Shown here: piece after piece, positions 37,630 through 55,384 of the stretch
How positions within the stretch are numbered: the stretch's first letter is position 1
Layout of the letters: each line of letters starts with the position of its first letter
DNA from: Callorhinchus milii
Lineage: Eukaryota
DNA: 64,000 nucleotides
Assembly (NCBI RefSeq): GCF_018977255.1
Contig: NW_024704807.1
Coordinates: 186,001 to 250,000, forward strand
Direction of reading: 5' to 3'
Notes under the pieces: model-generated
What the model saw: only the letters and a program-made list of their open reading frames with translations
Told to the model about the DNA's origin: nothing
The model's database searches: none
Translations under genes and position numbers: made by a program

Positions 37630-38058
37630 TACCTCTGGCTCTGGTCTGCTCCACGTCCCCCACCCCAACCGCCCTACCATCCGTGGTCGGGCCTTCAGGC
37701 TCTCAGCCCCCAGGCTCTGGAACTCTATCCCCCAGTGCCTTCGCCACGTCCTCCCTTTCCTCCTTCAAGGCCGGTCTCAAAACCTTTCTCTTTGACCGTG
37801 CCTTCAGCTCCCCTCTCGACTCTCTTCCCCCTCCTCGCTCCCTCCCTTCCCTCCCCTCACCCTGACCATTTCCCCACTCCTTGCTCCTTCCCTTCCCTCC
37901 CCTCACCCTGACCATTTCCCCCCTCCTCGCAACCTCCCTTCCCTCCCCTCATCCTGACCATTCCCCCCCTGCTCGAGTCATGACCCAACTGTGCTGCGCC
38001 TTGGGACGTCCTCCTGACGTGAAAGGCGCTTTTTAAATGGAATCTTGTTGTTGTTGTT
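37630..38058 (+). mobile_element. 5'-truncated L2 3' fragment
   Basis: Near-identical to 34910-35299 with an extra 3' UTR repeat unit. Confidence 0.92.
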
Positions 38059-39179
38059 GTCTCCACAGTCTCCTCTTCAACCGCGCATTCCTCCAGGCAG
38101 CTCCCTCTCCCCTCCCTGCCCTCCATCATCCTGATCCCAACCTCCAGCTCGGGGCCCAATCTTTGAGGTCCTCCCGATGTGAAAGAAACTTTACAAATGT
38201 GATGTTGTTGCTGTGTATTACCGCTGAGCTACATGACTCCACAAATGATCCTTGCATTGGATATTGCGCCTGATCACAACCTTCTGACGCCTCAAAGCGC
38301 TTCAAGGAATATACTGTACAGTAAAGTGACGGTGTCATTTGAGGGTGAAACGCGGCAGGAAATGTGCAGTTCAGTATCGCGTAAACAGTCGTGGACCAAA
38401 GTTAAGTGACCAAATTAATATTATTGTAAGGAGATTTGACGTAAAACGACAATGTGGGTCTCTCTCTTCCCAACCCCATGACCAGCTCCAGAGCTGGTCT
38501 GTCAGCTCAGAGTCCCCGCGATGTGTGGGTGTTTCAGCGCCTTGGGACGTCCTCCCGACGGGAAAGGCGCTCTATAAATGGAATCTTGTTGTTGTTGTTG
38601 TGTGTGTTGGGGAGTGCAACAAACACACCACCTCATGACTCGGAGGCGAGAGAGAGAGAGAGAAAGAGAGATAGTGAGAGCAAGAGCCGGAAACGCAACC
38701 GAAGCCGAAATATAAAACTCTGCAGCTGGAACCTTTGTAGCTGTAAATGTATTAGTCAATTTGGATCAAGTCTATTAATTTATTAATCGCATTGTCAAAG
38801 ATGTGAAAGATTGGAACTTGCGAGCGCCAACTTAGTGTGAGATTAAACAGCCGATGTTCCTGTATTCCGTTGCTCTAACTTCATAAACTTAATGATAAAG
38901 CATGTTTTTAACATCCACCATCAAGTAGCACGTCACTGAGACGTCTCAAAGCGCTTCACACAATGTGCTGTAACGTGTAGTGACTGTGACTTTGGTGGGT
39001 GGAACTCAACAAGAATTTTGCAACAGCAGTGTCCCACAAACCGTCGTGGATTAAGCGACCAAATTCTTATTTTGTAAGATGTGGACGATTGCAACTTGCG
39101 AGTTCCTGCTTCTTGTGAGATTACTTTCCTTTGCAATGGCGCCACAAACTTAACGGCAAAGCTTTAACCATCACCGTCA

Positions 39180-39507
39180 GTGGAGTCCTGTAGCTCAGTG
39201 GTTAGAGCACTCGCTTTGCAAGTGAGAGACCTGAGTTCAATTCCAGGCAGAGGGCGAAACCTTGGGCAAGTTTCCTTACTCCACACAGAGCCTAATAATA
39301 ATCCCTCCAAAACCAAAAACAATAATAAATTGGTCATTTTCAATCCACGACTGTTTGTGGGACATTGCTGTGCGCAATTGGCTGCCGCGTTCGTCCACAA
39401 ATATACAGTCAATTCACTTTACAGTGTGTTCTGTGAAGCGCTTTGGGACGTCCTCCCGACGTGAAAAGCGCTACATCAAATGCAAGGATTATTATTATTA
39501 TTATTAT
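39180..39507 (+). mobile_element. tRNA-Ala-derived SINE
   Basis: Full consensus. Confidence 0.93.
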
Positions 39508-39893
39508 CAGTTGCAGTAGTAGTCATATAAATACATGCAACATATATGCATAATATGTTTTATTACCATTTCTCTAAGACTAATTAGACATTTTATCGCG
39601 ACTATTTAGTCACACTGTATATATTGTGTCAGACGCGGTCAGGAGGTATCGCCCTCTGAGATAGAAGGCTTTGATCTGATTTCACTAAACATTTTTAACC
39701 TTAGTTGAACGTTCAATTTGACCGTGAGCGCAACGTTGTGCAGTGGAAGTAGAACGGACTGAGCTTTACAAGTGGGTTACTCTCTGTCTGTCAAAACTAA
39801 TCTGATGGGGAATGAGATTGAAAAGGTCAAAAGGTTTCATCATCCGAACTATACTTCTAAAGCACGTAACTCGCGAAAACTTTCTGATTTCAG

Positions 39894-39926
39894 CTCCTCA
39901 AGTCGACAGTCAAGATAAGAAATCAG
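39894..39926 (+). CDS. SRCR gene short N-terminal linker exon (APQVDSQDKKS)
   Basis: tttctgatttcAG..GTGAGT, 33 nt, phase 1-1. Confidence 0.6.
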
Positions 39927-42900
39927 GTGAGTTTTTTTGGATAAGCTATTTGTCTTCAGCACAAAATTCATCAAATACAATTAAATCAAAACTTTGTAGC
40001 ACCACCAAACCCAAGACTAGGGCCATCCTCCCGACATAAATGGTACGAAAAGTACTGCAGATGCAACTTGCTGAATCTTTTATGGATGTCAGGCTCCATT
40101 GGCTTCCATTAGCAAAACGGATATTGTTTATAATCCTGACACTCACATGCCATTCACCTCATGCCCTTAGCATCTTACTTATACCCCTCCTCCTCTAGCA
40201 GTCCCACCTATCCTTCGGCCTCATCGACAACATCTTGCATTTGTATACCGTCCCTGATGCAGGTTAGCATCTCAGAGCGCCTGGGTCAGCAGGACCCCGA
40301 CCCAGAGAAAGAGGGAGGTCGAAGTGGAAGCTCTTCCCAAGTTATATCAACTTGGAGTCAAGGAGGAGGGATTGAGGAAGAGTGCTGCAGTGTTTCTGGA
40401 CAAGCTCTGCCCTGTTAAGAACCCAGAGACCCTTCCCTTCCCCGGGTGACAGGCACATGTACAAGAAGATAAGAAGTTATTGTTTTTGCTGTGAAGATCT
40501 ATCCCGCAGTTTCAATACATCTCACGTTGAGTTTGTCCTTGTTATTTTTTCTCTCCTTTACAGTACTGAATTGAGAGGAACATTTCCTCTGTTTGTTTGA
40601 ATTTTAACCTCATCTTTGCAGGAACACTCAAGGCGATTCGTGTCTTCCATCTAACCATTGCAACTTTAATACGTATTGACTGGTGTTTTCCTGTAAATTT
40701 GAAGCTAAAGCATTTGCTCCCCGATCCCTCTTTCTCCACCTTATGTAATCCCCTATTTAAACAAACCTAAGTAATACAACTTTAGTAACCTCGGTCTGTG
40801 CTTCAAATCGTCTCTTGATTTACACGCCTCTCCACCCTGTTCTCCCATCCAAATATCCACACCTCGATTCCAGTCCACATTTAACTTTCGTCTTGTGTCA
40901 ATTATTATTGCTCCACATCCCGCTGAGCCTATCAATGTCACCTGAAATGTGAGGACACGTGGAATGTGCAGCACCTTTAACTCTATCATTCTCTGAAAAC
41001 CATCGTTCAAGTCCCACCATCGATTACATATACTGACACAACCTGCACAACTCTTCCAGCGCTTCACAGAATTTACTGTAAGGAGCAATGACTGTGTAGG
41101 CAAATGCAACAGCTGCAACAAAAACAACTCGGATTGATATAGCGCCCTCAACGCCGGACGGCGACTCAGAGCGCTTCCGATTGAGTACAAATATTATTAT
41201 TATAATTATGACTATCCTGCGCGACTGGAAATCAATTACAAAGGCATGTTTTTGGTGATGTTACTTGCAGATCATTTGAGGCTGGCGAATGGCGGCAGCC
41301 CGTGTGCCGGGAGAGTGGAGGTCTACCACGATGGACAGTGGGGCACAGTGTTTGGCCTTGGCTCTGGTGACAGTGGTTGGGACATGTTGGACGCGGTTGT
41401 GGTGTGTAAGGAGTTGGGCTGTGGAGCCGCGCTGTCAGCATCAGGAGACGCTCACTTTGGCGAAGGCTCAGGTCCCGTTGTGACGGAGAATGTTCAGTGC
41501 AGAGGGAGTGAGTCTACTCTGAGGGATTGTCAGTCACAGCCCTGGAGTGACTATTCAGTGTACTGGTCACACTCCTATGATGCCGGCGTCATCTGCTCAG
41601 GTAAATATTTCAGTGTCATTTTTTTCAATCCTCATGTTTTCGGTAAACCACAGTTTGAGAAACTCTGATAGAGATTGCATTCCACATGATGTCAGTTTGT
41701 CAGTTTTAAATCCCTAGTTTTTTTGGGGGTTCACACCGCCTCCTTCCGCTCCTCACCACCCCCCAACCTCTCTCCCGCTGCCGCCCACCCTCCAGCCCTC
41801 CTCCGTCGTTCAATGTTGATTTTCTTTAACCTCCGTGTTTCTGCACAACTGTGGCTTCAATCCTTCAATGAAATAATTTTTCAGCACGGAAGTAAAATAT
41901 ATTTATTTTAAATATATGCGTCCTTAAGATAATAATTAGTAATTAATCCTAGAGAATCCCTCAATCGCCTGGCCAGCACCTCGCCCGGCACCCCACCCCC
42001 GGCTCGGGGTCAACCACTATTAAACGGTCCTAGACATGTTACATGATTGCAAGTTGTTTTTTTTTAACACATTTTCCCTTTCCCGACCAAAGTGTCTCAG
42101 ATAATACGTAGTAATCAAATGTGACAGTAGATCTTGTGAAGAGCTTCGAGTCGTCCACCTGTCATAAACGGCTCAATGTCAAAAATGACGATGGTTATAA
42201 TCTGGAATTAAGTTTGCAAATGGTAAAAATATAATTTTCTAACTGCGGTATGAAGCCTGCGTGCAGTAGTGTTTATTATTTCAACTCAAACGGCTTTCCG
42301 TCCTGCCCCTCTAGCTCACTTGCTGCGCTGCTAATTGCCCCATCCCCACCTTAATAATAATAATAATAATCCTTGCATTTGATATCGCGCTTTTCACGTC
42401 GGGAGGACGTCCCAAAGCGCTTCACAGAACACACTGTAAAGTGAATTGACTGTATATTTGTGGGCGAACGCGGCAGCCAATTGCGCACAGCAATGTCCCA
42501 CAAACAGTCGTAGATTGAAAATGACCAATTTATTATTGTTTTTGGAGGGATTATTATTAGGCTGTGTGTGGAGTAAGGAAACTTGCCCAAGATTTCGCCC
42601 TGACCTGCCTGGAATTGAACTCAGGTCTCTAACTTGCAAAGCGAGTGATCTAACCACTGAGCTACAGGACTCCATTCAGGAGAGGCTTCAATCATTGATT
42701 CAGACTTCTTTTCAAACCGGAACAAATATACATTGAAATCCGCAATGGTTCCTTATGGTGTTCCATCCAAGACAGTCGCTCCATCTCTCCGACTTTTGGT
42801 TTCTTGGGTTTAATTGGCAAATTGCTGCAAAATATTGACCGGGCTTATTAACAGTCCTTTCTTTCTTCATTGTCCTCATTATCTTCTGAGATCCCCATTG

Positions 42901-45900
42901 CACAGCAGGAAATTTCAGTCCCTTCTTTACGCTCTCAGGCTCTCTGACTCCCATTAGGTAGTAGGTACTGTCTCTTCTCATCCTCTCAGACCCCCTTTGC
43001 ACCAAATTTATTGTCCTTCCCTTCCTCACCCTCTCCCACCCCCATTGCACAGGAGGTGCTATCTCTCCTCACCCTCGCAGACTTCCATTGCACAGCAGAT
43101 AGTGCTATTCCTCTGCTCACACTCTCACTCTTCCATTGCACCTCAGGTATTGTCTCTCACCACCTTCTCCGACCCACATTGCCTCTCAGGTGGTATCTCT
43201 CCTAACTCTCTCCGCCTCTTCTTGCACAGTTCCTGCTTACACTCTCAGACCCCATTGCAGACCCCATTGAATTGTAGATACTGTCATTCCACCCCAGTCA
43301 CTTCACTATTAATGCACAGCAGCTACTTCTAAATGATTTGGGACGTCATTCTAACCTGCAGGTCGCAGCGTAAACTTATATTGTGTCCTTTTGAAGCTGC
43401 GTAAGATATTTGTAGGGAAACTCAGCACCACAAAAAAAACTTGCATTGATACGCAGGTAGTTTCGCATGGAGCTTAATCACTACCTCACTCACCTGAAAA
43501 GTATCTAAATGTACATTTCTATCTCTAAATTTCTGATGATTGTTTCAGCTTTCACCTGTTTGCTGTCTGTCGTTAATCTTTCTGTCAACGTGGAGTCCTG
43601 TATCTCAGTGGTTAGAGCACTCGCTTTGCGAGCGAGAGACCCGAGTTCAACTCCAGGCAGAAGGCGAAACCTTGGGCAAGTTTCCTTACTCCACACAGAG
43701 CCTAATAATAATCCCTCCAAAACCAAAAACAAGAATTAAATGGGTCATTTTCAATCTACGACTGTTTGCGGGACATTGCTGTGCGCAATTGGCTGCCGCG
43801 TTCACCAACAAATATACAGTCAATTCACATACAGTGCGTCGTGCGAAGTGCATTGGCACGTCATCCCGACGTGAAAAGCGCTATATCAAATGCAAGGATT
43901 ATTATTATTATAGGTACGTTCTTTGTATTATAATAACCCATATCACGTTAAATCTTCCACTACAGAACATTATCCCCCAAAATTAATTGGTGGAAGCAAT
44001 GCCTGTTCCGGAAGAGTTGAATTGCAGCGCAATTATAAATCGGGAACAATCTGCGATCATTATTGGGATTTACAGGACGCCGATGTGCTCTGTCGGCAAT
44101 TGGATTGTGGCTTCGCTTTGTCAACTGGTTCTGGAACACTGTTTGGGAAAGAAACAGCTCTTATCTGGAAAACTAACTTCAATTGTGTCGGTAATGAATA
44201 CCGAGTGTCGCACTGTCCTGTATCATTCTGGGAGAAGTTCAGCTGTACACATGACAATGATGTTACTGTTGTATGTTCCGGTGAGTGAAATAATAATTCT
44301 TGCATTTGATAAAGTGCATTACTACCTGATTATTATTAAGTCATTGAGACTTCTTCAACGCGCTTCAAATAGTATAACTTAATGAAATCTGACTGCATAT
44401 TTTGTCGTCGGAAAAGCCAACAACTTAAAAAATAATGGGTCATACACTTTAAAAGTAAAATCTACCTTTTCTCAAATGATACGCTGTCTGTCTAACAGAA
44501 CCTGATCTATTGTGTGAGTAAGATTTGCGAAGAGTTATTATTCAGGTGTCAGAGGTGACACCAATCTCCATCTCTAAAAATCAGCACAAACCAAATTTAA
44601 TTTTATTATTGCATACGAGAGCATAGACTCCTGAGACAAAGTGTTTACTCCCGATTCCCATAGAGTAGTCTGGTCCTGATGAAGGACAATCTCTGGTTTT
44701 AGACTGTGACGATAATGCTCTTCTGCTAGAAATGCAACGATTCTTTTAAAAATTCTCCTTCTATTCAAGTATTTGTTTCCTCCTGGCACATGAGGTTAGT
44801 TGTGCACTTGGGCTGGAGGCTGCTGTCATTTTTTGTGTTATTGTCTGTAGATTATGTGTAGCTGTGAACACCAGTAACGTCGTCGTCTGTGAAATGTTCA
44901 TGTAATTTCTACGTTACTATGAATATTTCTGTGTCATTTTGTCGGGTGTATTGTCACATTCGACATACCTATTTTCAATTACTCACACGATATACTTATC
45001 TTCAGCTCTTACAGCTTTGAGTATGAATTGTGCATTGAAATCGTTGCAGGTACACAGTGGCACTTACGGTTAGAGAGCGGTGTGAGCGGCTGTGATGGGC
45101 GAGTGGAGATTTTTCATGACGGTACTTGGGGCAGATTGCTGGACGATTCCTGGAATATATCAGATGGCGATGTCATCTGCCGACAGCTGAACTGTGGCTC
45201 TGCTATTTCAGTCTACAACTCTTCCCAATACGGGGAAGGCACTGGACCTGTGTGGATCAATAATGTTCAGTGTGTGGGAACCGAGACACACATCTGGAAC
45301 TGCTCACATTCCACAGTGGCTTCATCCTCCTGGACCAGCCGGGATGTGGGAGTGATTTGTTCGGGTGAGTGCACTTTAGTGATAAATAGAATAAATGGAA
45401 TAAATCTTTGTTAATTTTGGTAACACATTGCTAAATAACTTACATTATGCCTCTCTCTCGGTGAGTGCTCATCTTCATTGATGTAGAAATGTCCCACCAG
45501 TTTGAATTACTCCACCTGTGATGCTGGGACAAGAGTATGAACGTCAATACACAATGAAAGTTCACACATATACATTGAGTATCAATTAATTTTTTTGGAT
45601 GACGAATAATATTAAACCGCAAACGATCTCTTTATATCCTAAATAGAAATTTGACATACTGTTTTACTTTGCAACAGAACACAAACAGCTTACACTAAAC
45701 GAATCAAATTGGAAAACATTTCGTACTGGAGTTCAGAGTTCAAGTGAGTGAACGTTTACCAATACTTTTTATTTCACCAGGAGGTTTTAAATAGCATTTT
45801 AAATCGGTGCATGTTATGCCTTGAATTAAACTTTCCTCATTTTCAGCAGAAGATGTTCAGATCAGACTGATGGACGGTGGGAGTTCGTGTGCTGGGAGAG

Positions 45901-48900
45901 TGGAGATTTACTACAACAGAACCTGGGGGACGGTGTGTGATGACTCCTGGGGTTCACTTGAGGCGAATGTTGTGTGCAAACAGCTCGGATGTGGATCTGC
46001 AGTTCATACAACATCTGCGGCCACTTGTGGACGAGCCTCAGCTCCAGTTTGGTTGGATGACGTGAGATGTACAGGAAAGGAATCAGCTCTCTGGGAATGC
46101 CCCTCTTCTCCATGGGGGCAACATGACTGTTATCATAAAGAAGATGTGAGCATCGTGTGTAAAGGTAAGAGATTAATCACTTTGTCTTACATCAGCAAAT
46201 TCCACTGATAGGGTGTGAGCTTGGATCAGATTTTAGCACTTTCTCCATTCAGGTAAATGGTATTTGGTTTCAAAGGCCTCATGGAATAATTTTGGCAAAA
46301 GCTAACAATTCAGTGCAGTAATCTTTGCCTCTGATGGTGTTATTACCTGTTCACCTGAGAAAAAATGATCCCATGGGCAATGCTGGAAAAGGCAAGGATG
46401 ATTGCCATTGTGCCCGGGGCCAACTATCCTGGCGATGAAACATGTGGAGTCCTGTAGATCAGTGGTTAGAGCACTTGCTTTGAAAGCGAGAGACCTGAGT
46501 TCAATTCCAGGCAGAGGGCGAAACCTTAGGCAAGTTTCCTTACTCCACAAAGAGCCTAATAATAATCCCTCCAAAAATCAAAAACAATAATAAATTGGTC
46601 ATTTTTCAATCCACGACTGTTTGTGGGACATTGCTGTGCGCAACTGGCTGCCGCCTTTGCCCACACATATAAAATCAGTTCATTTTACAGTGCGTTCTAT
46701 GAAGCGCTTCAGGACGCACTCCTGACGTGAAAAGCGCTATATCAAATGCAAGGATTATTATTATTATCATTATGTTCTATTTGTGGTTAGATGTGGGATA
46801 TTGTATGGCAGTTTGTGTCTAGATATTCCGTCACCACAGTTAGAAACAGCTGTAAAATAGTAATAATAATTTTGTTGTTTTTGGTTTTTGGAGGGATTAT
46901 TATAGGCTCTGTGTGGAGTAAGAAAATTTGATACAGCGCTTTTCACTTCGGGAGGACGTCCCAAAGCGCTTCACAGAATGCACTGTAAAGTGAATTGACT
47001 GTATATTTGTGGACGAACGCGGCAGCCAATTGCGCACAGCAATGTCCCACAAACAGTCGTAAATTGAAACTGACCAATTTATTATTGTTTTTGGTTTTGG
47101 AGGGATTAGTATTAGGCTCTGCGTGTAGTAAGGAAACTTGCCCAAGGTTTCGCTCTCTGCCTGAAATTGAACTCAGGTCTCTCGCTTGCAAAGCGAGTGC
47201 TCTAACCACTGAGCTACAGGAGGTAGATTGACTACGTTGCAGTTGAGAGATTTCAATTCTATCATAACACCATGTTGCCTCACAGAGCACAAGATGCTGC
47301 GGCTGGCGAATGGGCTACATTCCTGCGAGGGGAGAGTGGAAGTGTTTTACAATGGGACCTGGGGCACAGTCTGCTCGGACTCCATGGGAATCGACGAAGC
47401 TGAGGTAATCTGCAAACAGTTAGATTGTGGCAAAGCTCTCGAAGTTGAATATGATGGAAAATTTGACGAAGGATCTGGACCTATTTGGTTGGATGACATG
47501 GAGTGCAATTCAAAGGAATCCTTCCTGTGGCAGTGCTCCTCACGACCTTGGGGTGAACATAACTGTGTTCATTCGGAAGATGTGGGTGTGATGTGTTCAG
47601 GTAGTAAAATGTCCCTTAGTTCACATCTCTGATGAAATATTTATTGTACCTATGTTTGAACCAGTTTGCTTATCTGATGTATTTTTGATGCAGAGAAAGC
47701 TCCGGAAAAAAGGGAGAGGGCAAAACTATGCGATGGGAGATCACCGGATCATCAGATTCGTTTATCAGGTACTGAATGAAAAATAAATGAATGAACAGAA
47801 TTTGTATTTGTTATCAAATCATTCACATCAGGTGGAATTCTAAGTGCGCTTCACATTATCTACTGTAACGTGGTTTGACTGCAATGATAATAATCCTTCC
47901 ATTGGATAATGCGCTTTTCACGTTTTCTTGAATTGTCAAAGCGCTTCACGGAATTTACTGGAAAGTGAAGCGACTGCATATTTGTGGGCGAAACGCGGCA
48001 GACAATTGAGCACAGCGGTGTCCCACAACCAATTGTCGATCTAGTGATCAAATTATTATCACTAATGTTTATTTTTGAAGGTTTATTTATAACAGATCCT
48101 GTAAATAATACTTTACATGATAAATTCTATTGATGACAATATGGAAGAGTGCGTATTTTATTGGTGTGAGTAACTAACATGTGATATGAATACTGTCTAT
48201 CAATACGTCCTCCCGACGCGAAATTCGCTATACAAATGTAATCTTGTTGTTGTTGTTGCTGTCTGATCAGGACAGGAGTTGCGGTTGGTTGGAGGAAGCA
48301 GCATTTGCTCGGGGAGAGTTGAGATACTGAGCAATAAGACGTGGGGGACGGTGTGTGACGACTCCTGGGATATCCGAGAGGCCAGTGTGGTGTGCGGACA
48401 GCTGGACTGCGGCCCGGCCGTGCGGGCTGTGGGACAGGCGGGGTTCGGACAAGGCGCTGGTCAGATATGGCTGGACGAGCTTCACTGCAGAGGAAGCGAA
48501 TCCTTTCTGTGGGATTGTGTCTCTTCATCCGCGGGTCACAGCGACTGCGTTCACAAAGAAGATGCTGGTGTGGTTTGCTCCGGTAGGGATCCGATCTCTC
48601 AATGTTCATTGACAAATTTGAGGTTTTTTAAATATTTCTCAACAAAAGCAGATTAATTCTGACTTGATTTGAAGCCAGAAATTGAATTGTTACTGGATTA
48701 ATGGTGTTTGCGATGTGTTGCAGGTAAACCTCCCAGACCGCCTGTCCCAAACCCATCCTTTGGTAAATAAAACAATTACTTGACCTCTTGATGATGTGTT
48801 GCTTAACATTCATAGATATTACCAACCAGTATTGTCTTTGATTCGTAAACAAGGAAATATACTTAAGCAGTACATTTGTAAACTAACCTGCCACAAGTCA

Positions 48901-51900
48901 ACACTTGAGAAATGAACAGACTGTATAACTACTTTTTAGAAATTAACAGGCTGTTTAACTTCAGGAAAAGATCTCCATATATTCCATTATTAACACGGTT
49001 TGGGCATTTTCTTCTGACTGCACTGTGCAACGTGTCATACATTATTTGGCCTGAGATATTCTTCAGTATAGTATGAATATTTTTCGTTATAATTTCGAAA
49101 ATGTGACGACCACATATTCTGCAACAAAAAATAACAAATGTTATGTCCTTGACTTGCAAAGTCCAGTTGATCAACATACCTTTCGTGGTCTGCATCGTCC
49201 TTGGAATCCTGTTAGCAGTGGTACTGTTTGCACTGATAGTACAGATGGACAGCAATTCTTCAGGAACAGGTGAGCCTGGAATCTGGTCTCACAGCACTGC
49301 CTGGAGCTCCGTTATCAATTCAGAAGAAATCCTACTGATGCACGTCTCTCTCTTGTTAATTTAATACTCTTGTCTGTTTTTACCATCTCGATTTCATTGC
49401 CTATGTTCACATGTATCTCTAAAGTGGAACAAACTGAAACTAAAGACATATACGTTCAAATGCGTAGCTCAAACACAAACACAGATGCATAAAGAAACCC
49501 ACCAGACACAATTAAGCCTCAACGTAAACTGAGCGCAACAACATATATTTCGTAAAGAATACNAAAAAAGTAGTTAAATTGACACAAAAACGTAGATACC
49601 CAAAGCATCACATATACACAGTTGTATTAACACACCAACACACAGAGCTAAGTAGATATTTGTAGGTACCTAAATACAAATGCACAGTCATATTTACCGA
49701 TTGAAACAAACACTTACAAAAACAAGTACACTGATGAATAATGAGGCAATAGTGACGATGATATATTGATATTTTCAAATAATAATACTAACGTAACATG
49801 TTCCAGATATTTACACATCAATTTCAAACTCCACTGTGCAATTTCAGGTTAATATTTTAATTTCTGTACATGTCAACTTCCAACAGAGGAAAAATATCCG
49901 TCTGTTCGTTTGTATCAAGCAATTTATGAAGAAATTGAGGAAGAACCAATCAGAAGAAGAAGCGTTGAGTCTGGCTCCTCTGGTATATAGTTTACAATTA
50001 AGTTTTTTGTATCTCTATCATTGTAAAGACAAACGTCAACATCAGTATCCCGATTGGTGGCAAATGCAAATGATTGAATGCGCTGTGGATAGGATTTCAA
50101 GCTTTTATTCAGAGAACTGAAAAAGCCACATCTTGTTGCGTTGTATCAATTTACCCACTTAATAGAGAGAAAACCTACTGAATACTTCAATTTGTTCGGT
50201 CTTTCAATTTTCAAATATTATCAACGATGATTTCTGCATTTACCAATTAAATTAAGTTACATTATTTAATTTAATATACAGTAAAATAACTGTTAGATAG
50301 TGGGTTTTATAACTTCACCAAAACGAATCCTACAGAAATTAATATAAGCGATGGTTATAGTGTGTCTGTAGTCGCAGCGAATATCTAAAATAATACCATG
50401 TTTTCAAATGTGTCATTCGTAGCCTAAACAGAGGCAGTATTCAAAAATTATATTAATATTATTTAACCAACTTGCTCCTGGTATGTTAAAGATTTTCTCT
50501 TGATCAACATCATATTTTTGAGCGGTTGACCATGTCTTTATCCATGGAAAGTGATCCACGATTTCGGAAAAAAACTCTCATTTTTTATACCTTTTTTCAT
50601 TTTGATATTGGAGTCGAATTAGGCTCTAAGAACCTCTGTAATGTGACAGTAATGACATTATTTGCACAGTTTCAGGATCCAACGATTCTATCAGTAAACT
50701 GGAGTACTACACTGGGGAGAGTGTGAATGGATCTGATGCAGAACAAGGAAACGCTGAGGTGTTTCTTCCGAATGGTGAGTGAGTGAAAAAATTATTGTGT
50801 GCGATACAGCCTCTGATCAATTCGACGAGACGTTTCAAAGCACTTCACATATGTTTACTGTGATTTTTAGTGATTGTATATCTCTTGGTGAACTGGAAAG
50901 GCAATTTGTGCGCAAAATATGCACAGTAATCAGGAGGAATGTGGGGCAACCCTCCAGTATAAGAACTATTTCCCTTTTGAGATTTGCAATATTTAAATTC
51001 CAGCTAAACATCCAAACGGAGCTCAATGCACTGCACTGCTGTGGAGTGTTATCCAGAGTGTGATCTTAGTCCCCGAGTGGATTACAATCAGAAACTTCCG
51101 ACCCAGAGGCCAAAGAGCTCCCAATTTATCCAGTTTTCACAGTAAAACAAGCTTTAATCTTCAGATAAAGTATCTAAAAAGAAATTCAGGATTTTTTCAT
51201 AGTTCAGGCATAAGATACATTGAGCACCACTGTGTCCAAATTTGGGTGGATATGGATAGACATTTGGGGAAGACAAATTTGCAGGGCTGTGGGGAGAGCG
51301 CGGAAGAGTTGGAGTAATTTTGGTCGCTCTTTCAATAGATGGACTGAATGGCCTCCTTCTGTGCTGTATAATATTATGATATCTGCCTCCTTATCCCATC
51401 TGAATGTTTGAGTGCGTAAGACTGACTCACTGTTAACAGATCATCTTCAGGAAGATTACGACGTAGCTGAGGGTGGAACCTTCCAGATGGCGGACCGGGG
51501 CCTCCTCCTGGTCACTGACACACACCCTGATGTCCCCGCACTGACCAGTCACACTGTCCAGGAAGCCTCGCTCTGTCAGGGTAAGAGCCGAACTGTCATG
51601 TCTTAACTTACCGCCGGAGATATTTAATCAGCAACACATCTGGGAGTGAAAATCATCATCACAGTCGCAATTATCATCAATCTTCCATTCCATACAGAAA
51701 TGTAATGGCATAAGGACAACAAGGATCACAATTGTGCAGTGCCTTTCAAGTTAGGACGTCTCGGACAGGCTTCAATGTGTAGTGACTGTATGTGTAGGCG
51801 AGTTGGTACGTGTTTGCACCATGGGATTGGTAATAGGGCAGCTGGAGATATTTGGCCTCGCTGTGATATCTAAAATCAGAATAATTAGTGGTCGATGTGC

Positions 51901-52770
51901 AATCTGAAATGGATATTTCTCGGTTTGATGAATTCATCTCCGAGGCGCTCTGTAACGCCAATAATTGCACATACAGAATGGTGCTCTGTGTAGTGTCAAT
52001 AACTGCACATATAAAATGGTGCTGTGACTTTCCGATTAACGCAGATATCCTTGTTTCTACGTCTTGTTAATAACAACCAAAATGCAGTGAAGGAAATAAT
52101 CGTTCACAGCACTATCAGCAATTATTGAAACGCGCGTTTAAAAATTTATAATCTCATTAAAATTTAACAAGTGAGGAGGAATTCCATCTTGAATGCCCAA
52201 CCTTTCCAGTTTTTTTAAAATGCTGATTGTAGTGATGGAGGTAAGACACACAATCAGAAATCCAAGATGGTTATCTCCGCAATCGGTATTTTTCCTCACA
52301 CACAAACACACAGATACACACGCAGAGACTCACAGACATACACAACATACCTGTGTACACACAGACACAAACGCAGCACATACACGATCATAGACAGACA
52401 CAGGCGCACACAGACAGACACACACCGAGACACACAACACACAGACACTCACAGACAGATAGGCACACACAGGCAAACACACAGACAACACACATAGACA
52501 CACAGACTCACATATATACAGACACACAAATGCAGACGCAGACGCACACTTACAGACACACAGTGACACCTTTCTGAATGTAATCACTAATAAATGATGG
52601 CTCTCTCTGCAGAGGGTGGACATCACACAGACAGTGACCCGCTGTTTCCTGTTGACACCAGTCAGTGTGGTTATGATTATGATGATATTGACTGTGAGAA
52701 TGACACCGAGAAGAACAGACCACTTCCCATTGGGAATCAAAGGGAATCTCCTGAGCTCTGCACCGTCTGA
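39894..52770 (+). CDS. CD163/WC1/SCART-family group B SRCR type I membrane receptor: 6 SRCR domains, TM, Tyr-motif tail; signal exon not located
   Basis: Exons, all phase 1 with AG/GT: 39894-39926, 41271-41600, 43966-44280, 45050-45364, 45847-46164, 47286-47600, 47694-47768, 48271-48582, 48724-48762, 49162-49269, 49887-49982, 50676-50774, 51440-51580, 52613-52770 (TGA). They join into one open frame of ~884 aa. Confidence 0.85.
41271..41600 (+). CDS. SRCR domain 1 (6 Cys)
   Basis: LRLANGGSPCAGRVEV..WGTVF..VVCKELGCG..VQC..RDC..DAGVICS. Confidence 0.95.
42352..42674 (-). mobile_element. tRNA-Ala-derived SINE (intronic)
   Basis: Full consensus, reverse strand. Confidence 0.92.
43590..43911 (+). 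mobile_element. tRNA-Ala-derived SINE (intronic)
   Basis: Full consensus. Confidence 0.9.
43966..44280 (+). CDS. SRCR domain 2 (8 Cys)
   Basis: KLIGGSNACSGRVE..GTICDHYW..FNC..HCPV..CTHDNDVTVVCS. Confidence 0.95.
45050..45364 (+). CDS. SRCR domain 3 (6 Cys)
   Basis: LRLESGVSGCDGRVE..WGRLLDDSW..VQC..WNC..DVGVICS. Confidence 0.95.
45847..46164 (+). CDS. SRCR domain 4 (8 Cys)
   Basis: [54 protein letters not shown]. Confidence 0.95.
46444..46771 (+). mobile_element. tRNA-Ala-derived SINE (intronic)
   Basis: Full consensus. Confidence 0.92.
46861..47220 (-). mobile_element. tRNA-Ala-derived SINE with duplicated internal segment at its 3' end
   Basis: Full consensus followed by a second copy of ttactccacacagagcct..aaaaac before the ATT tail. 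Confidence 0.88.
47286..47600 (+). CDS. SRCR domain 5 (8 Cys)
   Basis: [42 protein letters not shown]. Confidence 0.95.
47694..47768 (+). CDS. Inter-domain linker exon (EKAPEKRERAKLCDGRSPDHQIRLS)
   Basis: ttttgatgcAG..GTACTG, 75 nt, phase 1-1, open. Confidence 0.7.
48271..48582 (+). CDS. SRCR domain 6 (8 Cys, membrane-proximal)
   Basis: [48 protein letters not shown]. Confidence 0.95.
48724..48762 (+). CDS. Pro-rich stalk exon (GKPPRPPVPNPSF)
   Basis: gtgttgcAG..GTAAAT, 39 nt, phase 1-1. Confidence 0.65.
49162..49269 (+). CDS. Transmembrane exon (IPFVVCIVLGILLAVVLFALIV)
   Basis: Hydrophobic stretch with donor GTGAGC. The acceptor (AAG at 49159-49161) is the best phase-1 candidate but is weak. 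Confidence 0.8.
49887..49982 (+). CDS. Cytoplasmic exon 1 (IYEEI motif)
   Basis: EEKYPSVRLYQAIYEEIEEEPIRRRSVESGSS. Confidence 0.85.
50676..50774 (+). CDS. Cytoplasmic exon 2 (KLEYYT)
   Basis: GSNDSISKLEYYTGESVNGSDAEQGNAEVFLPN; AG/GTGAGT. Confidence 0.8.
51440..51580 (+). CDS. Cytoplasmic exon 3 (EDYDVAE)
   Basis: DHLQEDYDVAEGGTFQ..SLCQ; AG/GTAAGA. Confidence 0.8.
52300..52565. repeat. CA-rich simple repeat
   Basis: Degenerate (CA)/(CAGA)n. Confidence 0.9.
52613..52770 (+). CDS. Last coding exon (YDYDDID, stop TGA 52768-52770)
   Basis: EGGHHTD..CGYDYDDIDCEN..ELCTV*; donor GTGAGT at 52793. Confidence 0.8.
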
Positions 52771-54214
52771 TCGCAACATCCCCATCAAACAGGTGAGTTC
52801 ATGATTTACAGCATTACTTACATCACAGAAAGCCGCCAATGATTGATATGATCGTCCTGGTGACATGTGTACTAGTAGTCACAGTTACAGGTGATTGTAA
52901 TGGTTATACAACTTGACCAACACCGGTCAGTGATTTTAATCATTCACAATCCTGACTTGAGGCTGATATTAGACAGAATGGCAGTGATCATGTGCAGCCG
53001 TCACACATGTATTCACGCCAATTGATGATGGAATTAAAATTAAAAACTTCTTGTCAGAAACTTCACAGTGATGTGATCCATGGTTGGATGCGACTAAAAC
53101 GTTAATTTATATTTACTATTCTAAACTGTTGGAACTATTTTCTTTATTTGACTCAGAGATTATTGTTCCTATACGTTACGCGCAAAACTTTTATTTTATT
53201 TTCCTGAATCAAAATTTAATTTCACATTCTGCTATTTGAGCGTAAAAAGTCCTTCTTCCTTTGTAAATGTGGTATCAAATGGCAGAAACATTAACTAAAA
53301 TAGTTGGAAACAGTCTCTCAAACAGCAGCCGGTGAACGAATCCCAAGTAACCGCCCCAGAGATTGTCATTGCCAATGTGCTGTACTTTAGGATGTTATAC
53401 ATGGATCAATATTATGTTATTGATGAGAATAAATTATTTCCTTTAAATAATATCTTTTATTGTCTATTTAACAGAGCCATTCAACCGAAATTTCATCACC
53501 AATAATTACTGATTATCTTTAGATAGAAAACCAGAGGATAAAATGAATACACACGTTCGACCAACTTACCAAAGCAATTAATATGAACCCGTGTCACATC
53601 TTTCTGTGATAGCAAGTTTCCATGTGTGTTCTGTGTAAAACATTCCTCTGTGATTTTCAGAATGATTTGTTTGCATTTCAGGGTGAATTTAATGCATATT
53701 TTAAACATTGCAGTAAACTGATGCCTTTGTTCGTGTTATCATATTACACAGAAAATGGTTGTATTTTTATCCTTTTCTAATTTGTTTTGAATTTACTTTT
53801 ATGCTTACGATTCTAGACTGCAACTGCGCTTACGATTTTTTTTTATTTTCTCGTCATTTTAAAACATTTATTGTGATAAAATTATAAGATGACTGCACAT
53901 AATTGATTAGTTATTTTTGTTGAATTATATCAATCATCTTATTTTATCTCCCCTAAAATGAGTCATTGGTCAGTTGGATTAAAAAAGATCCAGTTTCAGA
54001 TGAAACTTGTATTCGAACCAGAAAGTTCTATGTTTATTCTGTAAACCACGGCGAGTATTAGTTTTGGGAATAATGGTAAAAGTACACGAGCAAACAAAAG
54101 AGAATTGATGTGATGACAGCACCCACCATGTGTCACAAGAGTGATATCTGCTCTTACCTGTTCATCTAATTAACAAACAGATTGTAAATGGTGAGTTAAA
54201 TTCAAATAGACTTC

Positions 54215-54220
54215 AATAAA
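54215..54220 (+). terminator. Candidate polyadenylation signal of the SRCR gene
   Basis: AATAAA ending an AT-rich putative 3' UTR exon that begins at acceptor ttaacAG (53475). Confidence 0.4.
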
Positions 54221-54401
54221 GAGCAAATGGTCATGTGACCGCCCAGTTGTTTGCCATTGTTTTCAAGTGCAGAACACACAAACCACTTACATCTGTCTGT
54301 CCCTGACCACAATGGATTGCAGAAGAATTAGTAGGTTCGTAACCTGAAATTCGGTGTGATTCTCACGAAATACAGCCTGGATCATTGGAGAGGTGTGAGG
54401 T

Positions 54402-54900
54402 AGAGGGCAGTGATGTGGGGTAGAGTGCAGTGATGTGGGTAGAGGCCAGTAATGTGTAGTAGAGGGCAGTGATGTGGGGTAGAGGGCGGTCATGTGGGTT
54501 AGAGGGTCGTGATGTGGATTAGAGGGCAGTTATGTAGGGTAGAGTGTAGAGATGTGGGGTAGAGGACAGTGATATGGATTAGAGTGCAATGGTGTTGGGT
54601 AGAGAGTAGTGATGTGGAGTAGAGGGCAATGATATGGGGTAGAGGGTAATGATGTGGATTAGAGGGCAGTGATGTGGGGTAGAGGGCGGTGATGTGGGAT
54701 AGAGGGCAGTGATGTGGGTTAGAGGGTCGTGATGCGGATTAGAGGGCAGTTATGTGGGGTAGAGAGTACCAATGTAGGGTAGAGGACAGTGATATTGATT
54801 AGAGTGCAATGATGTGGGGAAGAGGACAGTGATGTGGAGTAGAGGGCAATGATATGGGGTAGAGGGTAATGATGTGGATTAGAGGGCAGTGATGTTGGGT
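54402..54900. repeat. 20-bp minisatellite (~25 copies)
   Basis: Unit agagggcagtgatgtggggt. Confidence 0.95.
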
Positions 54901-55384
54901 TGTCCAATCCCGGCTGCTCGAGCGCAGATGGCAAAAACTGGCCTGACAGATCACCACCAACTGTGGCTCGAGCATCTCCACAGCTACAGACTTTCTTTGA
55001 CCCGTGAGAAAACGGCCTTCTTCTCCGACATCATCCTGGAGACAAAAAAACAATTCTAAAGGCCTTTGTTTCCACTACCCATTACCTCCTCCGCTCGCTC
55101 CCTCAGGCCTCCGCAATCTTCGCATCGAACGCCATGTGCGAGGAGGTCATGGACTTCTTTTCAACTATGGTAAATATGTCCGCCTGGCAGCCTCATGCTC
55201 CTGCGTCTTGTCACACACTAGCACTGCATCTTCGCGTCCCTCAGCCTCCCACCTCTCTTCCTACATTCAGGGCCGCGCCTTTGCTCACCTCCTTCCCCCT
55301 CCCCCTCGCTCCGCCTCGGTAATATTTATTGCAAAGCGCTCTGAGCTTGGACGTCGCTACACAAATCTAAGTTTTTGTTGTTGA
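54900..55384 (+). mobile_element. Degraded L2 fragment (internal part plus tail)
   Basis: Similar to 33160-33420 (gcgaggaggtcatggacttc vs gcgaggagatgctggatttc); ends in a tail-like ttgttgttg. Confidence 0.65.

What the first reader, a model, noticed from the sequence alone, without database searches (positions are those of the whole stretch)
39894..52770. WC1/SCART-like SRCR co-receptor gene nested antisense inside a TCR alpha/delta V array
Seen: a splice-consistent, stop-free 14-exon gene (6 group B SRCR domains, a linker exon before the last domain, Pro stalk, TM, four cytoplasmic exons) on the + strand, with minus-strand TCR V genes on both sides (28123-29078 and 60780-63332). Established: six-plus SRCR domains, a membrane-distal domain lacking C2/C7 and a tail with YEEL/YDD tyrosine motifs characterise ruminant WC1 and the CD163 family (SCART/CD163L1). 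WC1 is a gamma-delta T-cell co-receptor and bacterial pattern receptor, and in mammals these genes are not in the TRA/TRD locus. Inference: a cartilaginous fish may carry a gamma-delta co-receptor physically linked to, and possibly co-regulated with, its TCR delta locus. That would suggest an ancestral TCR delta-WC1 linkage. I know of no description of this arrangement but could not search the literature.
Basis: partly seen in the sequence, partly recalled or inferred. Interest (0 to 1): 0.9.

Follow-up and report, generated by a model that had tools for sequence, protein, structure and literature searches.

The report
WC1/SCART-like receptor gene inside TCR V array
An intact elephant-shark gene for a WC1/SCART-type scavenger receptor (the family that serves as gamma-delta T-cell co-receptors in cattle and mice) really does sit between T-cell-receptor V segments. 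It looks like a later duplication dropped into the array, not an ancestral TCR/co-receptor linkage.

Summary
The window is Callorhinchus milii unplaced scaffold MU249882.1. All 14 exons listed are stop-free, phase 1-1 and AG/GT-bounded, and encode six SRCR domains, an interdomain exon, a Pro stalk, a TM segment and a four-exon tail. I add a probable signal-peptide exon at 30838-30883, giving 15 exons and 899 aa.

The WC1/SCART reading is supported. D5 falls in the WC1 'e' clade (100/100) and D4 in the 'd' clade (92/90). No domain groups with DMBT1. The tail (YEEI, EYYT, DYDVAE, GYDYDD) matches tetrapod WC1-type tails (hhalign 96%, E 2e-9) but not CD163b tails.

Eight V segments with 23-bp-spacer RSS surround the gene, and the two tested are closest to solved TCR alpha/delta V domains.

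The ancestral-linkage inference is not supported. Four C. milii paralog loci and three elasmobranch loci show no V segments. The block shared with the paralogs runs from window 29176 to about 60600-60880. It starts 98 bp upstream of V28's ATG and ends beside a V pseudogene, which suggests a ~31.5 kb duplicate inserted into the array.

NCBI already annotates the gene, incompletely, as 'M130-like'. Expression and function are untested.

The parts
30838..30883 (+). Probable exon 1: start codon and signal peptide (MLRSLVIYLLLHILT plus 1 base), GT donor in phase 1. An in-frame upstream ATG lies at 30802.
   Evidence: Found by a scan for hydrophobic exons with a phase-1 donor. Same length and phase as Stegostoma exon 1. 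The region is 84-94% conserved in paralog loci L002, L005 and L007. The exon is 87-100% identical in those paralogs, with changes mostly synonymous. Its use is inferred; there is no transcript evidence.
32352..35147 (+). Intact 931-aa LINE ORF (AP endonuclease plus reverse transcriptase) inside intron 1. It explains the GC-rich, C-skewed stretch at 32-38 kb.
   Evidence: ORF list. Pfam RVT_1 E = 7e-37 and Exo_endo_phos E = 8e-11. The interval 31484-35299 has no counterpart in the colinear alignment to paralog L005.
39894..39926 (+). Exon 2, a 33-bp mini-exon (xPQVDSQDKKS), phase 1-1.
   Evidence: AG/GT boundaries. Conserved in paralog P0075 (CPQVDSQDKKP), skate (CQADPSES) and zebra shark (SQADSA).
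41271..41600 (+). Exon 3, SRCR D1. 'a'-like, 6 Cys, lacks C2 and C7.
   Evidence: Groups with bovine WC1 domain 1 at support 85/77.
43966..44280 (+). Exon 4, SRCR D2. b/c type, 8 Cys.
   Evidence: Falls in the b/c superclade at 100/97.
45050..45364 (+). Exon 5, SRCR D3. 6 Cys, lacks C2 and C7. It occupies the position of the SCART 'n' domain.
   Evidence: Clade of 8 at 100/99 with the turtle, caecilian, coelacanth, eel, shark and skate domains that precede 'd'. That clade has no bovine WC1 or M160 member.
45847..46164 (+). Exon 6, SRCR D4. 'd' type, 9 Cys.
   Evidence: Clade 92/90 with bovine WC1 domains 4, 6 and 9 and M160 domain 10.
47286..47600 (+). Exon 7, SRCR D5. 'e' type, 8 Cys.
   Evidence: Clade 100/100 with bovine WC1 domains 5 and 10 and M160 domain 11.
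47694..47768 (+). Exon 8, interdomain (linker) exon: EKAPEKRERAKLCDGRSPDHQIRLS.
   Evidence: Present in NCBI model P0022. A linker sits at the equivalent position in skate, shark and bovine WC1 proteins. An 'ID' exon is a shared feature of WC1, CD163A and CD163c-alpha (PMC2906472).
48271..48582 (+). Exon 9, SRCR D6. d'-like, membrane-proximal.
   Evidence: Groups with WC1 domain 11 and M160 domain 12 only inside a d'+b+c superclade at 78/90.
48724..48762 (+). Exon 10, Pro-rich stalk (GKPPRPPVPNPSF).
   Evidence: Conserved in paralogs P0075 and P0122.
49162..49269 (+). Exon 11, transmembrane segment (IPFVVCIVLGILLAVVLFALIV).
   Evidence: No nonsynonymous change against L005.
49887..49982 (+). 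Exon 12, cytoplasmic exon 1, carrying LYQAIYEEIEEE (the YEEI motif).
   Evidence: Y, I, Y, E, E, I are invariant in six chondrichthyan tails.
50676..50774 (+). Exon 13, cytoplasmic exon 2 (SNDSISKLEYYTGES).
   Evidence: The motif is shared with sharks, skate and turtle tails.
51440..51580 (+). Exon 14, cytoplasmic exon 3 (EDYDVAEGG...).
   Evidence: Aligned to WC1 NYDDAEE by hhalign.
52613..52770 (+). Exon 15, last exon (GYDYDDIDC...), stop TGA at 52768-52770.
   Evidence: The same C-terminus is annotated in paralog models P0021 and P0121.
28084..29078 (-). V28, an intact-looking germline V segment. Leader ATG at 29078, V exon ending at 28123, RSS-23 at 28084-28122. Head-to-head with the SRCR gene, 1.76 kb between the two start codons.
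   Evidence: Sequence read directly. Pfam V-set E = 1e-15. RSS scan. 43% identical to V62. UniRef A0A4W3IEJ6 is identical over the 92% of the query it aligns to.
60825..61588 (-). Pseudo-V (leader-like exon, SINE in the intron, V exon with a stop and a frameshift, no good RSS). It abuts the right end of the SRCR block.
   Evidence: and the tblastn hit of V62 residues 1-38.
62490..63332 (-). V62. Leader, SINE-bearing intron, V exon and RSS-23 (CACAGTG / 23 / ACAATAACT). Cys23 is replaced by Ser, so it may be non-functional.
   Evidence: The best single-domain PDB matches are human Vdelta1 and TRA V domains.
29176..60880 (.). Block homologous to the other C. milii SRCR paralog loci, read as the duplicated unit. 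The left breakpoint is sharp at 29176-29180. The right end is only bounded to 60603-60880.
   Evidence: blastn against L002 and L005-L007. L007 1-486 and L002 32397-32898 are homologous to each other (E = 5e-33) but absent from the window.

Best explanation
Shown.
- The locus encodes an intact type I membrane receptor of 899 aa.
- Its parts, in order, are a signal peptide, six group B SRCR domains in the order a, b/c, 'n-position', d, e, [interdomain exon], d', a Pro stalk, a TM segment and an acidic tail of about 175 aa.
- The tail carries four tyrosine motifs: YEEI, EYYT, DYDVAE and GYDYDD.
- The gene belongs to the WC1/SCART (CD163c-alpha) branch of the CD163 family.
- That branch is a multigene family in C. 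milii (at least five loci sequenced here) and is also present in sharks and skates.
- This copy lies between germline TCR alpha/delta-type V segments, in the opposite orientation.

Inferred, on origin.
- The copy arrived by a segmental duplication of about 31.5 kb, which carried its own promoter region.
- The duplicate was inserted between a V pseudogene and V28 in the holocephalan lineage.
- The linkage is therefore derived, not ancestral.

Inferred, on mechanism, by analogy with WC1.
- The SRCR ectodomains bind microbial or self ligands.
- On co-ligation with the TCR, a Src-family kinase phosphorylates the YEEI tyrosine and downstream tyrosines.
- SH2-domain effectors are then recruited and T-cell activation is potentiated.
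- Expression on gamma-delta T cells is plausible but untested.
For: Gene model. Pfam finds six SRCR domains. NCBI model P0022 is identical to the window exons it uses. The window is on MU249882.1.

Family assignment:
- 'e' clade at 100/100, 'd' clade at 92/90, D3 clade at 100/99.
- No window domain groups with DMBT1.
- The order a-c-n-d-e-d' equals the 'hybrid' chicken CD163_1/_8 organisation described in PMC2906472.
- The interdomain exon is a family trait.
- YEEI fits the family motif Y-(Q/E)-(D/C/E)-(I/L).

Tail homology:
- A whole-library phmmer search finds a turtle WC1-like tail at E = 3e-6 and a shark tail at E = 4e-5.
- hhalign of chondrichthyan against tetrapod WC1-type tails gives Prob 96.2% and E = 2e-9.
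- The control against CD163b tails gives Prob 0.5%.

Functional constraint: dN/dS is 0.37-0.42 against four paralogs. All 15 exons are found in three of them, and 14 in the fourth, whose fetched locus does not reach exon 1.

V array:
- Eight V segments have RSS-23.
- The best single-domain PDB matches are TCR alpha/delta V domains.

Derived insertion:
- No V segments in L002 and L005-L007, nor in skate L003, zebra shark L004 or Rhinoraja L009.
- The breakpoints are described.

Assembly: no gap larger than 1 N lies between V28 and V62.

A gamma-delta link in fish is plausible. In cod, the tcrg/tcrd-expressing T-cell cluster expresses a CD163-like SRCR gene (PMC9276791).
Against: - The scaffold is unplaced, and the family is repetitive (paralogs about 90% identical), so a contig-level error cannot be excluded.
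- The flanks of L005 and L006 are too short on the left to test for V segments. Only L002 (33 kb upstream) and L007 (0.5 kb) speak to the left breakpoint.
- The right breakpoint is only bounded, because L006 ends at window 60603.
- Whether the SRCR arrays share a chromosome with TRA/TRD, in C. milii or in elasmobranchs, could not be tested.
- No SCART, CD163A, CD5 or CD6 sequence was available, so the 'n' assignment rests on position alone and the 'a' assignment has only 85/77 support.
- Direct BLASTP of the tail against bovine WC1 is not significant (E = 0.23).
- The tail is acidic and of low complexity.
- There are no expression data.
- This copy lacks one or two SRCR exons that some paralogs have, and it has a LINE in intron 1.
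- Only two of the eight V segments were typed against solved structures.
Confidence: 0.6

Rival explanations
1. Ancestral linkage. A WC1/SCART-like co-receptor gene was physically linked to the TCR delta locus in the gnathostome ancestor, and the elephant shark preserves that state.
For: The gene sits inside the V array. All C. milii family members seen are on unplaced scaffolds. The whole cluster could therefore lie near TRA/TRD.
Against: Three elasmobranch loci of 51-116 kb hold tandem WC1-like genes but no V segment. Paralog L002 has 33 kb upstream and 3 kb downstream without a V. Paralog homology ends 98 bp from V28's ATG, and two paralogs share a different upstream flank.
Confidence: 0.12
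2. Assembly artefact. The SRCR block was joined to V-array sequence by a mis-assembly of repetitive DNA on an unplaced scaffold.
For: The scaffold is unplaced and 292.6 kb long. SINE copies and paralogs about 90% identical are abundant.
Against: No scaffold gap lies between V28 and V62. No repeat lies between V28's leader (29078) and the block edge (29176), nor between the pseudo-V exon and the right edge. A repeat-mediated mis-join would therefore fall inside the block or in SINEs beyond the V exons, and would still leave SRCR sequence abutting V sequence on both sides.
Confidence: 0.12
3. Bystander scavenger receptor. The gene is a macrophage or epithelial receptor of CD163A or DMBT1 type, or a decaying copy, with no T-cell role, and its position is incidental.
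For: NCBI names it 'M130-like' and names paralogs 'DMBT1-like'. There are no expression data. It has a LINE in intron 1 and fewer domains than some paralogs. Both right-hand V neighbours look defective.
Against: No CUB or ZP domain is present. No domain groups with DMBT1. The tail is of WC1 type and unrelated to CD163b tails. The ORF is intact with canonical splice sites, and dN/dS is about 0.4. In cod, a CD163-like SRCR gene marks the tcrg/tcrd-expressing T-cell cluster.
Confidence: 0.2

Closest known systems
[quoted passage not shown]
   Same: Single-exon group B SRCR domains. A membrane-proximal d-e-[interdomain exon]-d' cassette. A first domain lacking C2/C7. A TM segment plus an acidic tail with, in the same order, YEE(I/L), (N/D)YD(D/V)AE and GYD(D/Y)D motifs. 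A multigene family.
   Different: Six domains rather than 11, with no repeat of the b-c-d-e-d cassette. It has a D3 domain type absent from bovine WC1, and an extra EYYT motif that bovine WC1 lacks. Direct tail BLASTP is not significant. Expression and function are unknown. The bovine genes lie on chromosome 5 with CD163A (PMC2906472), not in a TCR locus.
CD163c-alpha / SCART1-2, and the 'hybrid' chicken CD163_1 and CD163_8 (a + c-n-d-e-d') of Herzig et al. 2010 (PMC2906472)
   Same: The domain order a-(b/c)-[domain between c and d]-d-e-d' is exactly the hybrid organisation described for those chicken genes. The Y-(Q/E)-(D/C/E)-(I/L) motif is present.
   Different: No SCART or chicken CD163_1 sequence was available here, so D3 = 'n' is inferred from position only. 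SCART has N-terminal m and l domains that this gene lacks.
CD163 / M130 (the name NCBI gives this gene) and CD163b / M160
   Same: Same family. CD163 is the closest solved structure. M160 domains 10-12 fall in the same d, e and d' groups.
   Different: The tail is unrelated to CD163b tails (hhalign Prob 0.5%). There are six domains rather than 9 or 12. The CD163A-diagnostic 'k' domain was not tested.
DMBT1 (the name NCBI gives several paralogs)
   Same: Tandem group B SRCR domains, with high overall bit scores.
   Different: No CUB or ZP domains. It has a TM segment and a signalling tail. DMBT1 domains form a separate group in the tree.
Atlantic cod 'm130' gene expressed by the tcrg/tcrd-expressing T-cell cluster (PMC9276791)
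   Same: A CD163-like group B SRCR gene in a fish, associated with T cells that express putative tcrg and tcrd.
   Different: The cod sequence was not compared here. No linkage to a TCR locus is reported for it.
Non-TCR genes inside mammalian TRA/TRD loci (olfactory-receptor genes among the distal V segments; DAD1 at the 3' end) - from my own knowledge, not tested
   Same: Unrelated genes can reside within or beside a TCR V array.
   Different: Here the nested gene belongs to a family that works with the TCR in other species.

Membership tests
CD163 family, WC1/SCART (CD163c-alpha) branch | Group B SRCR domains (6-8 Cys), one exon each | tested here: met
   Six phase 1-1 exons of 312-330 bp. 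Pfam E = 8e-170. Cys counts are 6, 8, 6, 9, 8, 8.
CD163 family, WC1/SCART (CD163c-alpha) branch | Membrane-proximal 'e' and 'd'' domains preceded by 'd', with a separate interdomain exon before d' | tested here: met
   D5 is in the 'e' clade at 100/100 and D4 in the 'd' clade at 92/90. D6 groups with WC1 d11 and M160 d12 only within a d'+b+c superclade at 78/90. The linker exon is 47694-47768. The feature is defined in PMC2906472.
CD163 family, WC1/SCART (CD163c-alpha) branch | Cytoplasmic Y-(Q/E)-(D/C/E)-(I/L) motif | tested here: met
   YEEI in exon 12, invariant in six chondrichthyan tails.
CD163 family, WC1/SCART (CD163c-alpha) branch | Tail homologous to WC1/CD163c-alpha-type tails rather than CD163A/b tails | tested here: met
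   phmmer against 1.8 billion proteins finds a turtle WC1-like tail at E = 3e-6. hhalign gives Prob 96.2% and E = 2e-9 against bovine, deer, turtle and caecilian tails, and Prob 0.5% against CD163b tails. CD163A tails were not available.
WC1 proper | N-terminal 'a' domain | tested here: inconclusive
   D1 groups with bovine WC1 domain 1 at only 85/77, in a clade that also holds M160 domains 1-6.
WC1 proper | Repeated b-c-d-e-d cassette (11 domains) | tested here: not met
   Only six SRCR exons are present in the window.
SCART / CD163c-alpha proper | Diagnostic 'n' domain between c and d; m and l domains at the N-terminus | tested here: inconclusive
   D3 occupies the n position. Its 100/99 clade includes the turtle, caecilian, eel and shark domains that sit directly before 'd' in their proteins. 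No SCART reference sequence was available. No m/l-like extra domains are present.
WC1/SCART | Multigene family | tested here: met
   At least five distinct C. milii loci on five scaffolds were sequenced here, and further predicted proteins exist. Tandem arrays occur in skate and zebra shark.
WC1/SCART | Expression on gamma-delta T cells; co-receptor and pattern-recognition activity | not testable with these tools
   No transcript or protein data were accessible. The only analogy is cod scRNA-seq.
DMBT1 | SRCR repeats with CUB and ZP domains, secreted | tested here: not met
   Pfam finds SRCR only. A TM segment and tail are present. DMBT1 domains form a separate group.
TCR alpha/delta V gene segments (the flanking array) | Leader exon, intron, V exon and a 23-bp-spacer RSS | tested here: met
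   All eight V segments have a heptamer, 23-nt spacer and nonamer with 1-3 mismatches. V28 and V62 were read in full.
TCR alpha/delta V gene segments (the flanking array) | Closest to TCR alpha/delta V domains rather than Ig, TRB or TRG | tested here: inconclusive
   For V62 and V5k the best single-domain PDB matches are Vdelta1/TRA and Valpha/TCR delta. For V28 and V15k the lists are swamped by two-domain scFv chains. They are 35-43% identical to V62.
TCR alpha/delta V gene segments (the flanking array) | Linkage to TRAJ/TRAC or TRDD/TRDJ/TRDC | not testable with these tools
   No J-like segment is present in the window. The rest of the scaffold could not be fetched.

The most novel reading that the evidence does not exclude
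Recombination-coupled co-receptor loss. All minus-strand V segments have their RSS at the low-coordinate end, so the J/C region should lie beyond the low-coordinate end of the window. The SRCR gene lies between V28 and the pseudo-V/V62. Any deletional V(D)J rearrangement using a V distal to it would then excise this SRCR copy on an excision circle. Rearrangement of V28 or a more proximal V would keep the gene, about 1.8 kb upstream of the active V promoter. Retention and expression of this paralog would thus be hard-wired to TCR V usage, much as TRD is lost on TRA rearrangement. A secondary point is better supported. The a-c-n-d-e-d' receptor with a YEEI tail dates back to the gnathostome ancestor.
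Probability: 0.12. Interest if true: 0.75.

Novelty: new member of a known kind. Interest (0 to 1): 0.45.

Why it matters
Published work on the WC1/SCART family covers mammals, chicken and platypus (PMC2906472). In seven full-text searches I found no paper that describes the family in cartilaginous fish, and none that reports a family member inside a TCR locus.

The present analysis shows that the full receptor design is conserved in a chimaera, sharks and skates. That design comprises the d-e-linker-d' cassette, the domain order of the 'hybrid' chicken type, and a tail with ordered tyrosine motifs including YEEI. The family therefore predates the split between cartilaginous and bony vertebrates.

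Cod gamma-delta-like T cells express a CD163-like gene. Together these points make it testable whether SRCR co-receptors were already part of gamma-delta T-cell biology in early jawed vertebrates.

The position inside the V array appears to be a lineage-specific accident. Even so, it offers a natural experiment on what happens to a gene that V(D)J recombination can delete.

Tried and rejected
- A word-indexed homolog search with the tail alone found only C. milii paralogs. The exhaustive phmmer search was needed.
- Direct BLASTP of the tail against bovine WC1 was not significant.
- The homolog search with V28 returned only unnamed 'Ig-like domain' proteins and no elasmobranch hits. It could neither name the locus nor serve as a synteny probe.
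- An exact look-up of the UniRef V28 protein, intended to reach the older independent assembly, found nothing on record.
- PDB searches with V28 and V15k were dominated by multi-V scFv chains and were uninformative.
- Candidate SCART1 orthologues (P0004, P0105, P0086) turned out to be DMBT1-type, so no SCART reference was obtained.
- The basking-shark top hit P0001 is a DMBT1-type array and is irrelevant to synteny.
- The Mobula locus was too long to fetch.
- The short in-frame 'MFLVMLLA' directly upstream of D1 was considered as a start. I rejected it because it is too short for a signal peptide and lies in the polypyrimidine tract of the acceptor.
- The NCBI start at ATG 39812 (MRLKRSKGFIIRT...) was rejected as a signal peptide in favour of exon 30838-30883.
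- No extra SRCR pseudo-exons were found elsewhere in the window.
- No J segments were found.

Full report
**What is there**

The window is 64 kb of eukaryotic DNA. Its only real gaps are at 892-1111 and 2890-2919, plus three single N's.

On the + strand, six ORF blocks carry the C-x-G-R-V-E signature of SRCR domains. Each block is bounded by a polypyrimidine/AG acceptor and a GT donor, and each starts and ends in phase 1.

Reading the sequence between and beyond them gave the remaining exons:
- a 33-bp mini-exon (39894-39926);
- a 75-bp interdomain exon (47694-47768);
- a 39-bp Pro stalk exon;
- a TM exon;
- four cytoplasmic exons, ending at TGA 52768-52770.

All are phase 1-1, and the joined frame has no stop. 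Pfam finds six SRCR domains at E = 8e-170.

**Identity of the window and prior annotation**

The best protein hits by identity are from Callorhinchus milii.

[quoted passage not shown] It is letter-for-letter the window's exons, but it skips D2, part of D6 and the stalk, and it reads through the donor of the third cytoplasmic exon.

P0022 maps to unplaced scaffold MU249882.1 (292,590 bp) of GCA_018977255.1. The gene is therefore already annotated, though incompletely. Paralog models P0021 and P0121 carry the same C-terminal exon as my model, which supports it.

**The missing 5' end**

Exon 39894-39926 has an acceptor and no ATG. In the zebra shark locus (L004) a homologous gene begins with a separate exon, MFVSLVKLLLLQLLN plus one base before GT. 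That exon lies 5.7 kb upstream of a homologous mini-exon.

A scan of the window for ATG-initiated hydrophobic exons with a phase-1 donor found MLRSLVIYLLLHILT plus T before gtaagt at 30838-30883. It has the same length and phase as the zebra shark exon.

The surrounding 600 bp is 84-94% conserved upstream of three paralogs. The exon itself is 87-100% identical in them.

With this exon the CDS is 2700 nt and encodes 899 aa without stops. Use of this exon is inferred.

Intron 1 holds an intact 931-aa LINE ORF with an endonuclease and a reverse transcriptase. This explains the GC-rich, C-skewed stretch seen.

**Which SRCR family**

I cut 154 SRCR domains out of 15 proteins and built trees from a non-redundant subset: 107 domains for the quick tree and 103 for the careful one. 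The proteins were:
- the window model;
- bovine WC1.1 and macaque M160;
- cat, lemming and lizard DMBT1, and a lamprey DMBT1-like protein;
- a chicken SRCR protein;
- WC1-like proteins of turtle, caecilian, coelacanth and eel;
- skate and two shark proteins.

Results from the careful tree:
- D5 sits in a 12-member clade at 100/100. The clade consists only of the penultimate ('e') domains of WC1, M160 and the WC1-like proteins.
- D4 sits in the 'd' clade at 92/90.
- D6 groups with WC1 domain 11 and M160 domain 12, but only inside a d'+b+c superclade at 78/90.
- D2 is of b/c type (100/97).
- D1 groups with WC1 domain 'a' at 85/77.
- D3 belongs to a 100/99 clade of domains that mostly precede 'd' in turtle, caecilian, coelacanth, eel, shark and skate. 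That clade has no bovine WC1 or M160 member.
- No window domain groups with DMBT1.

Herzig et al. (PMC2906472) define the family by the d'/e membrane-proximal domains, an interdomain exon and a Y-(Q/E)-(D/C/E)-(I/L) tail motif. They also describe chicken 'hybrid' genes with WC1's 'a' domain plus SCART's c-n-d-e-d' cassette. The elephant-shark gene has exactly that order if D3 is 'n'. I could not verify this for lack of a SCART sequence.

**The tail**

The tail reads LYQAIYEEIEEE ... SISKLEYYTGES ... EDYDVAEGG ... CGYDYDDIDC.

- Bovine WC1 has AEAVYEELDY ... ENYDDAEEV ... AGYDDVEL in the same order.
- A turtle tail has all four motifs.
- Direct BLASTP against bovine WC1 is not significant (E = 0.23).
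- The exhaustive phmmer search of 1.8 billion proteins returns the turtle tail at E = 3e-6 and a shark protein at E = 4e-5.
- A profile of six chondrichthyan tails aligns to a profile of bovine, deer, turtle and caecilian tails with Prob 96.2% and E = 2e-9.
- The same profile gives Prob 0.5% against CD163b tails.
- YEEI is invariant in the chondrichthyan tails.

**A family under constraint**

At least five C. milii loci on five scaffolds carry paralogs with six to eight SRCR exons. All 15 exons are found in three of the four paralog loci compared. In the fourth, L006, the fetched sequence does not reach exon 1.

dN/dS against those four paralogs is 0.37-0.42. Divergence along the gene is mosaic, which suggests gene conversion.

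Skate and zebra shark loci hold tandem copies with the same architecture and tail, and the Rhinoraja locus holds one such gene.

**The V array**

Eight V-set exons lie in the window (Pfam). Each is followed by a heptamer, a 23-nt spacer and a nonamer.

- V28 has a good leader, an intron, a V exon and a near-consensus RSS.
- To the right of the SRCR gene lie a degenerate pseudo-V and then V62. V62 has a good RSS but lacks Cys23.
- For V62 the best single-domain solved structures are human Vdelta1 and TRA V domains.
- For V5k they are mouse Valpha and a TCR delta chain.
- The lists for V28 and V15k are swamped by scFv chains. These two are 35-43% identical to V62.
- No J segment is present.

I therefore accept 'TCR alpha/delta-type V array', with the reservation that linkage to J/C was not seen.

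**Is the linkage ancestral?**

tblastn with the six window V types tested finds no V in any other locus. The loci searched were:
- four other C. milii paralog loci: L002 (74 kb) and L005-L007 (26-29 kb each);
- the skate locus (116 kb);
- the zebra shark locus (81 kb);
- the Rhinoraja locus (51 kb).

blastn of the window against the paralog loci shows colinear homology from window 29176-29180 onwards. The homology is interrupted by the LINE and by SINEs. It reaches 58.5 kb in L005 and L007, and 60603 in L006, where that locus ends.

The left edge is 98 bp upstream of V28's ATG. Beyond it, L007 and L002 are homologous to each other (E = 5e-33) but not to the window. The window copy has therefore lost the family's usual upstream flank and gained V28 instead.

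The right edge lies within about 200-300 bp of the pseudo-V.

The simplest reading is that a unit of about 31.5 kb was copied into the intergenic space between two V genes. The unit contained about 1.7 kb of its own upstream sequence, the gene, and about 8 kb of 3' flank.

This is inference. The flanks of L005 and L006 are too short to test for V segments, and chromosome-scale linkage could not be examined.

**Could it be an artefact?**

There is no scaffold gap between V28 and V62. No repeat separates the V exons from the edges of the block. A repeat-mediated mis-join would therefore still leave SRCR-unit sequence abutting V sequence on each side.

The scaffold is nonetheless unplaced, and read-level confirmation is needed.

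**How it probably works**

This follows from family knowledge and is not tested here. In WC1, phosphorylation of the YEEL tyrosine is required for potentiation of T-cell activation. The ectodomains bind bacteria (PMC2906472; abstract of PMC8356672). YEEI is the classical optimal ligand of Src-family SH2 domains (my own knowledge).

I therefore expect a ligand-binding SRCR ectodomain coupled to tyrosine-based signalling. Use on gamma-delta T cells is plausible. In cod, the tcrg/tcrd-expressing T-cell cluster expresses a CD163-like SRCR gene (PMC9276791).

**A consequence of the position**

This rests on the standard deletional V(D)J mechanism. The SRCR gene lies between V28 and the distal V segments. 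Rearrangement of a distal V would excise it, and rearrangement of V28 or a proximal V would retain it next to the active V promoter.

Whether this matters is doubtful, because several paralogs lie elsewhere.

**Literature**

Seven full-text searches, plus targeted reading of the elephant-shark genome paper, were run. They found no description of WC1/SCART-type genes in cartilaginous fish, and none of an SRCR gene inside a TCR locus.

**Verdict**

- The WC1/SCART assignment is supported.
- The position inside the V array is real in this assembly.
- The ancestral-linkage and co-regulation ideas are not supported.
- The gene is a new, incompletely annotated member of a known family in an unusual place.

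Noticed in passing
window 32352-35147 (+), and 35.1-38.1 kb: An intact 931-aa LINE ORF (AP endonuclease plus reverse transcriptase) lies in intron 1 of the SRCR gene. The same 45-46-bp C-rich repeat occurs at 35107-35203 and at 37827-37975, which suggests a second, partial element. The interval 31484-35299 has no counterpart in the colinear alignment to paralog L005.
   Followed up: partly
window 3.7-8.8 kb and 15.5-20.8 kb: There is a tandem duplication with a period of about 12 kb, containing a pair of V segments (V5k/V7k and V17k/V19k). The copies are 73-87% identical.
   Followed up: partly
window 2118-2414 (+): One V segment with a good RSS-23 lies in the opposite orientation to the other seven. 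It sits between the two real gaps (892-1111 and 2890-2919), so the inversion could be a scaffolding artefact or a genuinely inverted V.
   Followed up: no
window, many sites (e.g. 27421-27746, 39180-39507, 42352-42676, 43586-43912, 46443-46773, 46926-47221): An abundant SINE of about 320 bp produces spurious ORFs of the form 'MESCSSVVRALALQVRDLSSIPGRGRNLGQV...'. Copies lie in several SRCR introns and in the introns of V62 and the pseudo-V.
   Followed up: no
window 54394-54900 and 55405-56258: Two minisatellites lie 3' of the SRCR gene: a 20-bp unit repeated about 25 times and a 52-bp unit repeated about 16 times. Both regions also match the paralog loci. A long CA-rich microsatellite lies in the last intron at about 52280-52580.
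   Followed up: partly
window 45847-46164 (D4) and 47694-47768 (linker): D4 has a ninth cysteine (SAATCGRAS) and the interdomain exon has a single cysteine (AKLCDG). Both are present in most shark and skate homologues seen. They might form an interdomain disulfide.
   Followed up: no
window 31475-31648 and 31719-31758: A perfect 88-bp tandem duplication (2 copies, 100% identical) and a 40-nt poly-A run lie just upstream of the LINE.
   Followed up: no
paralog loci L005, L006, L007 compared with the window: Paralogs carry one or two extra SRCR exons. One lies between D1 and D2 (CSGRVELY...WGSVCGND). Another lies between D3 and D4 (CSGTVEVYRHGDWRRV...). Divergence along the gene is mosaic: pS is 0-0.08 in D1, D3, D6 and the last exons, but 0.24-0.5 in D2, D4 and D5. 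This suggests gene conversion among copies.
   Followed up: partly
L009 48740-50795 (Rhinoraja longicauda CM130177.1): In this skate the WC1-like gene is followed by an interferon-inducible GTPase (IIGP) gene, not by TCR segments.
   Followed up: no
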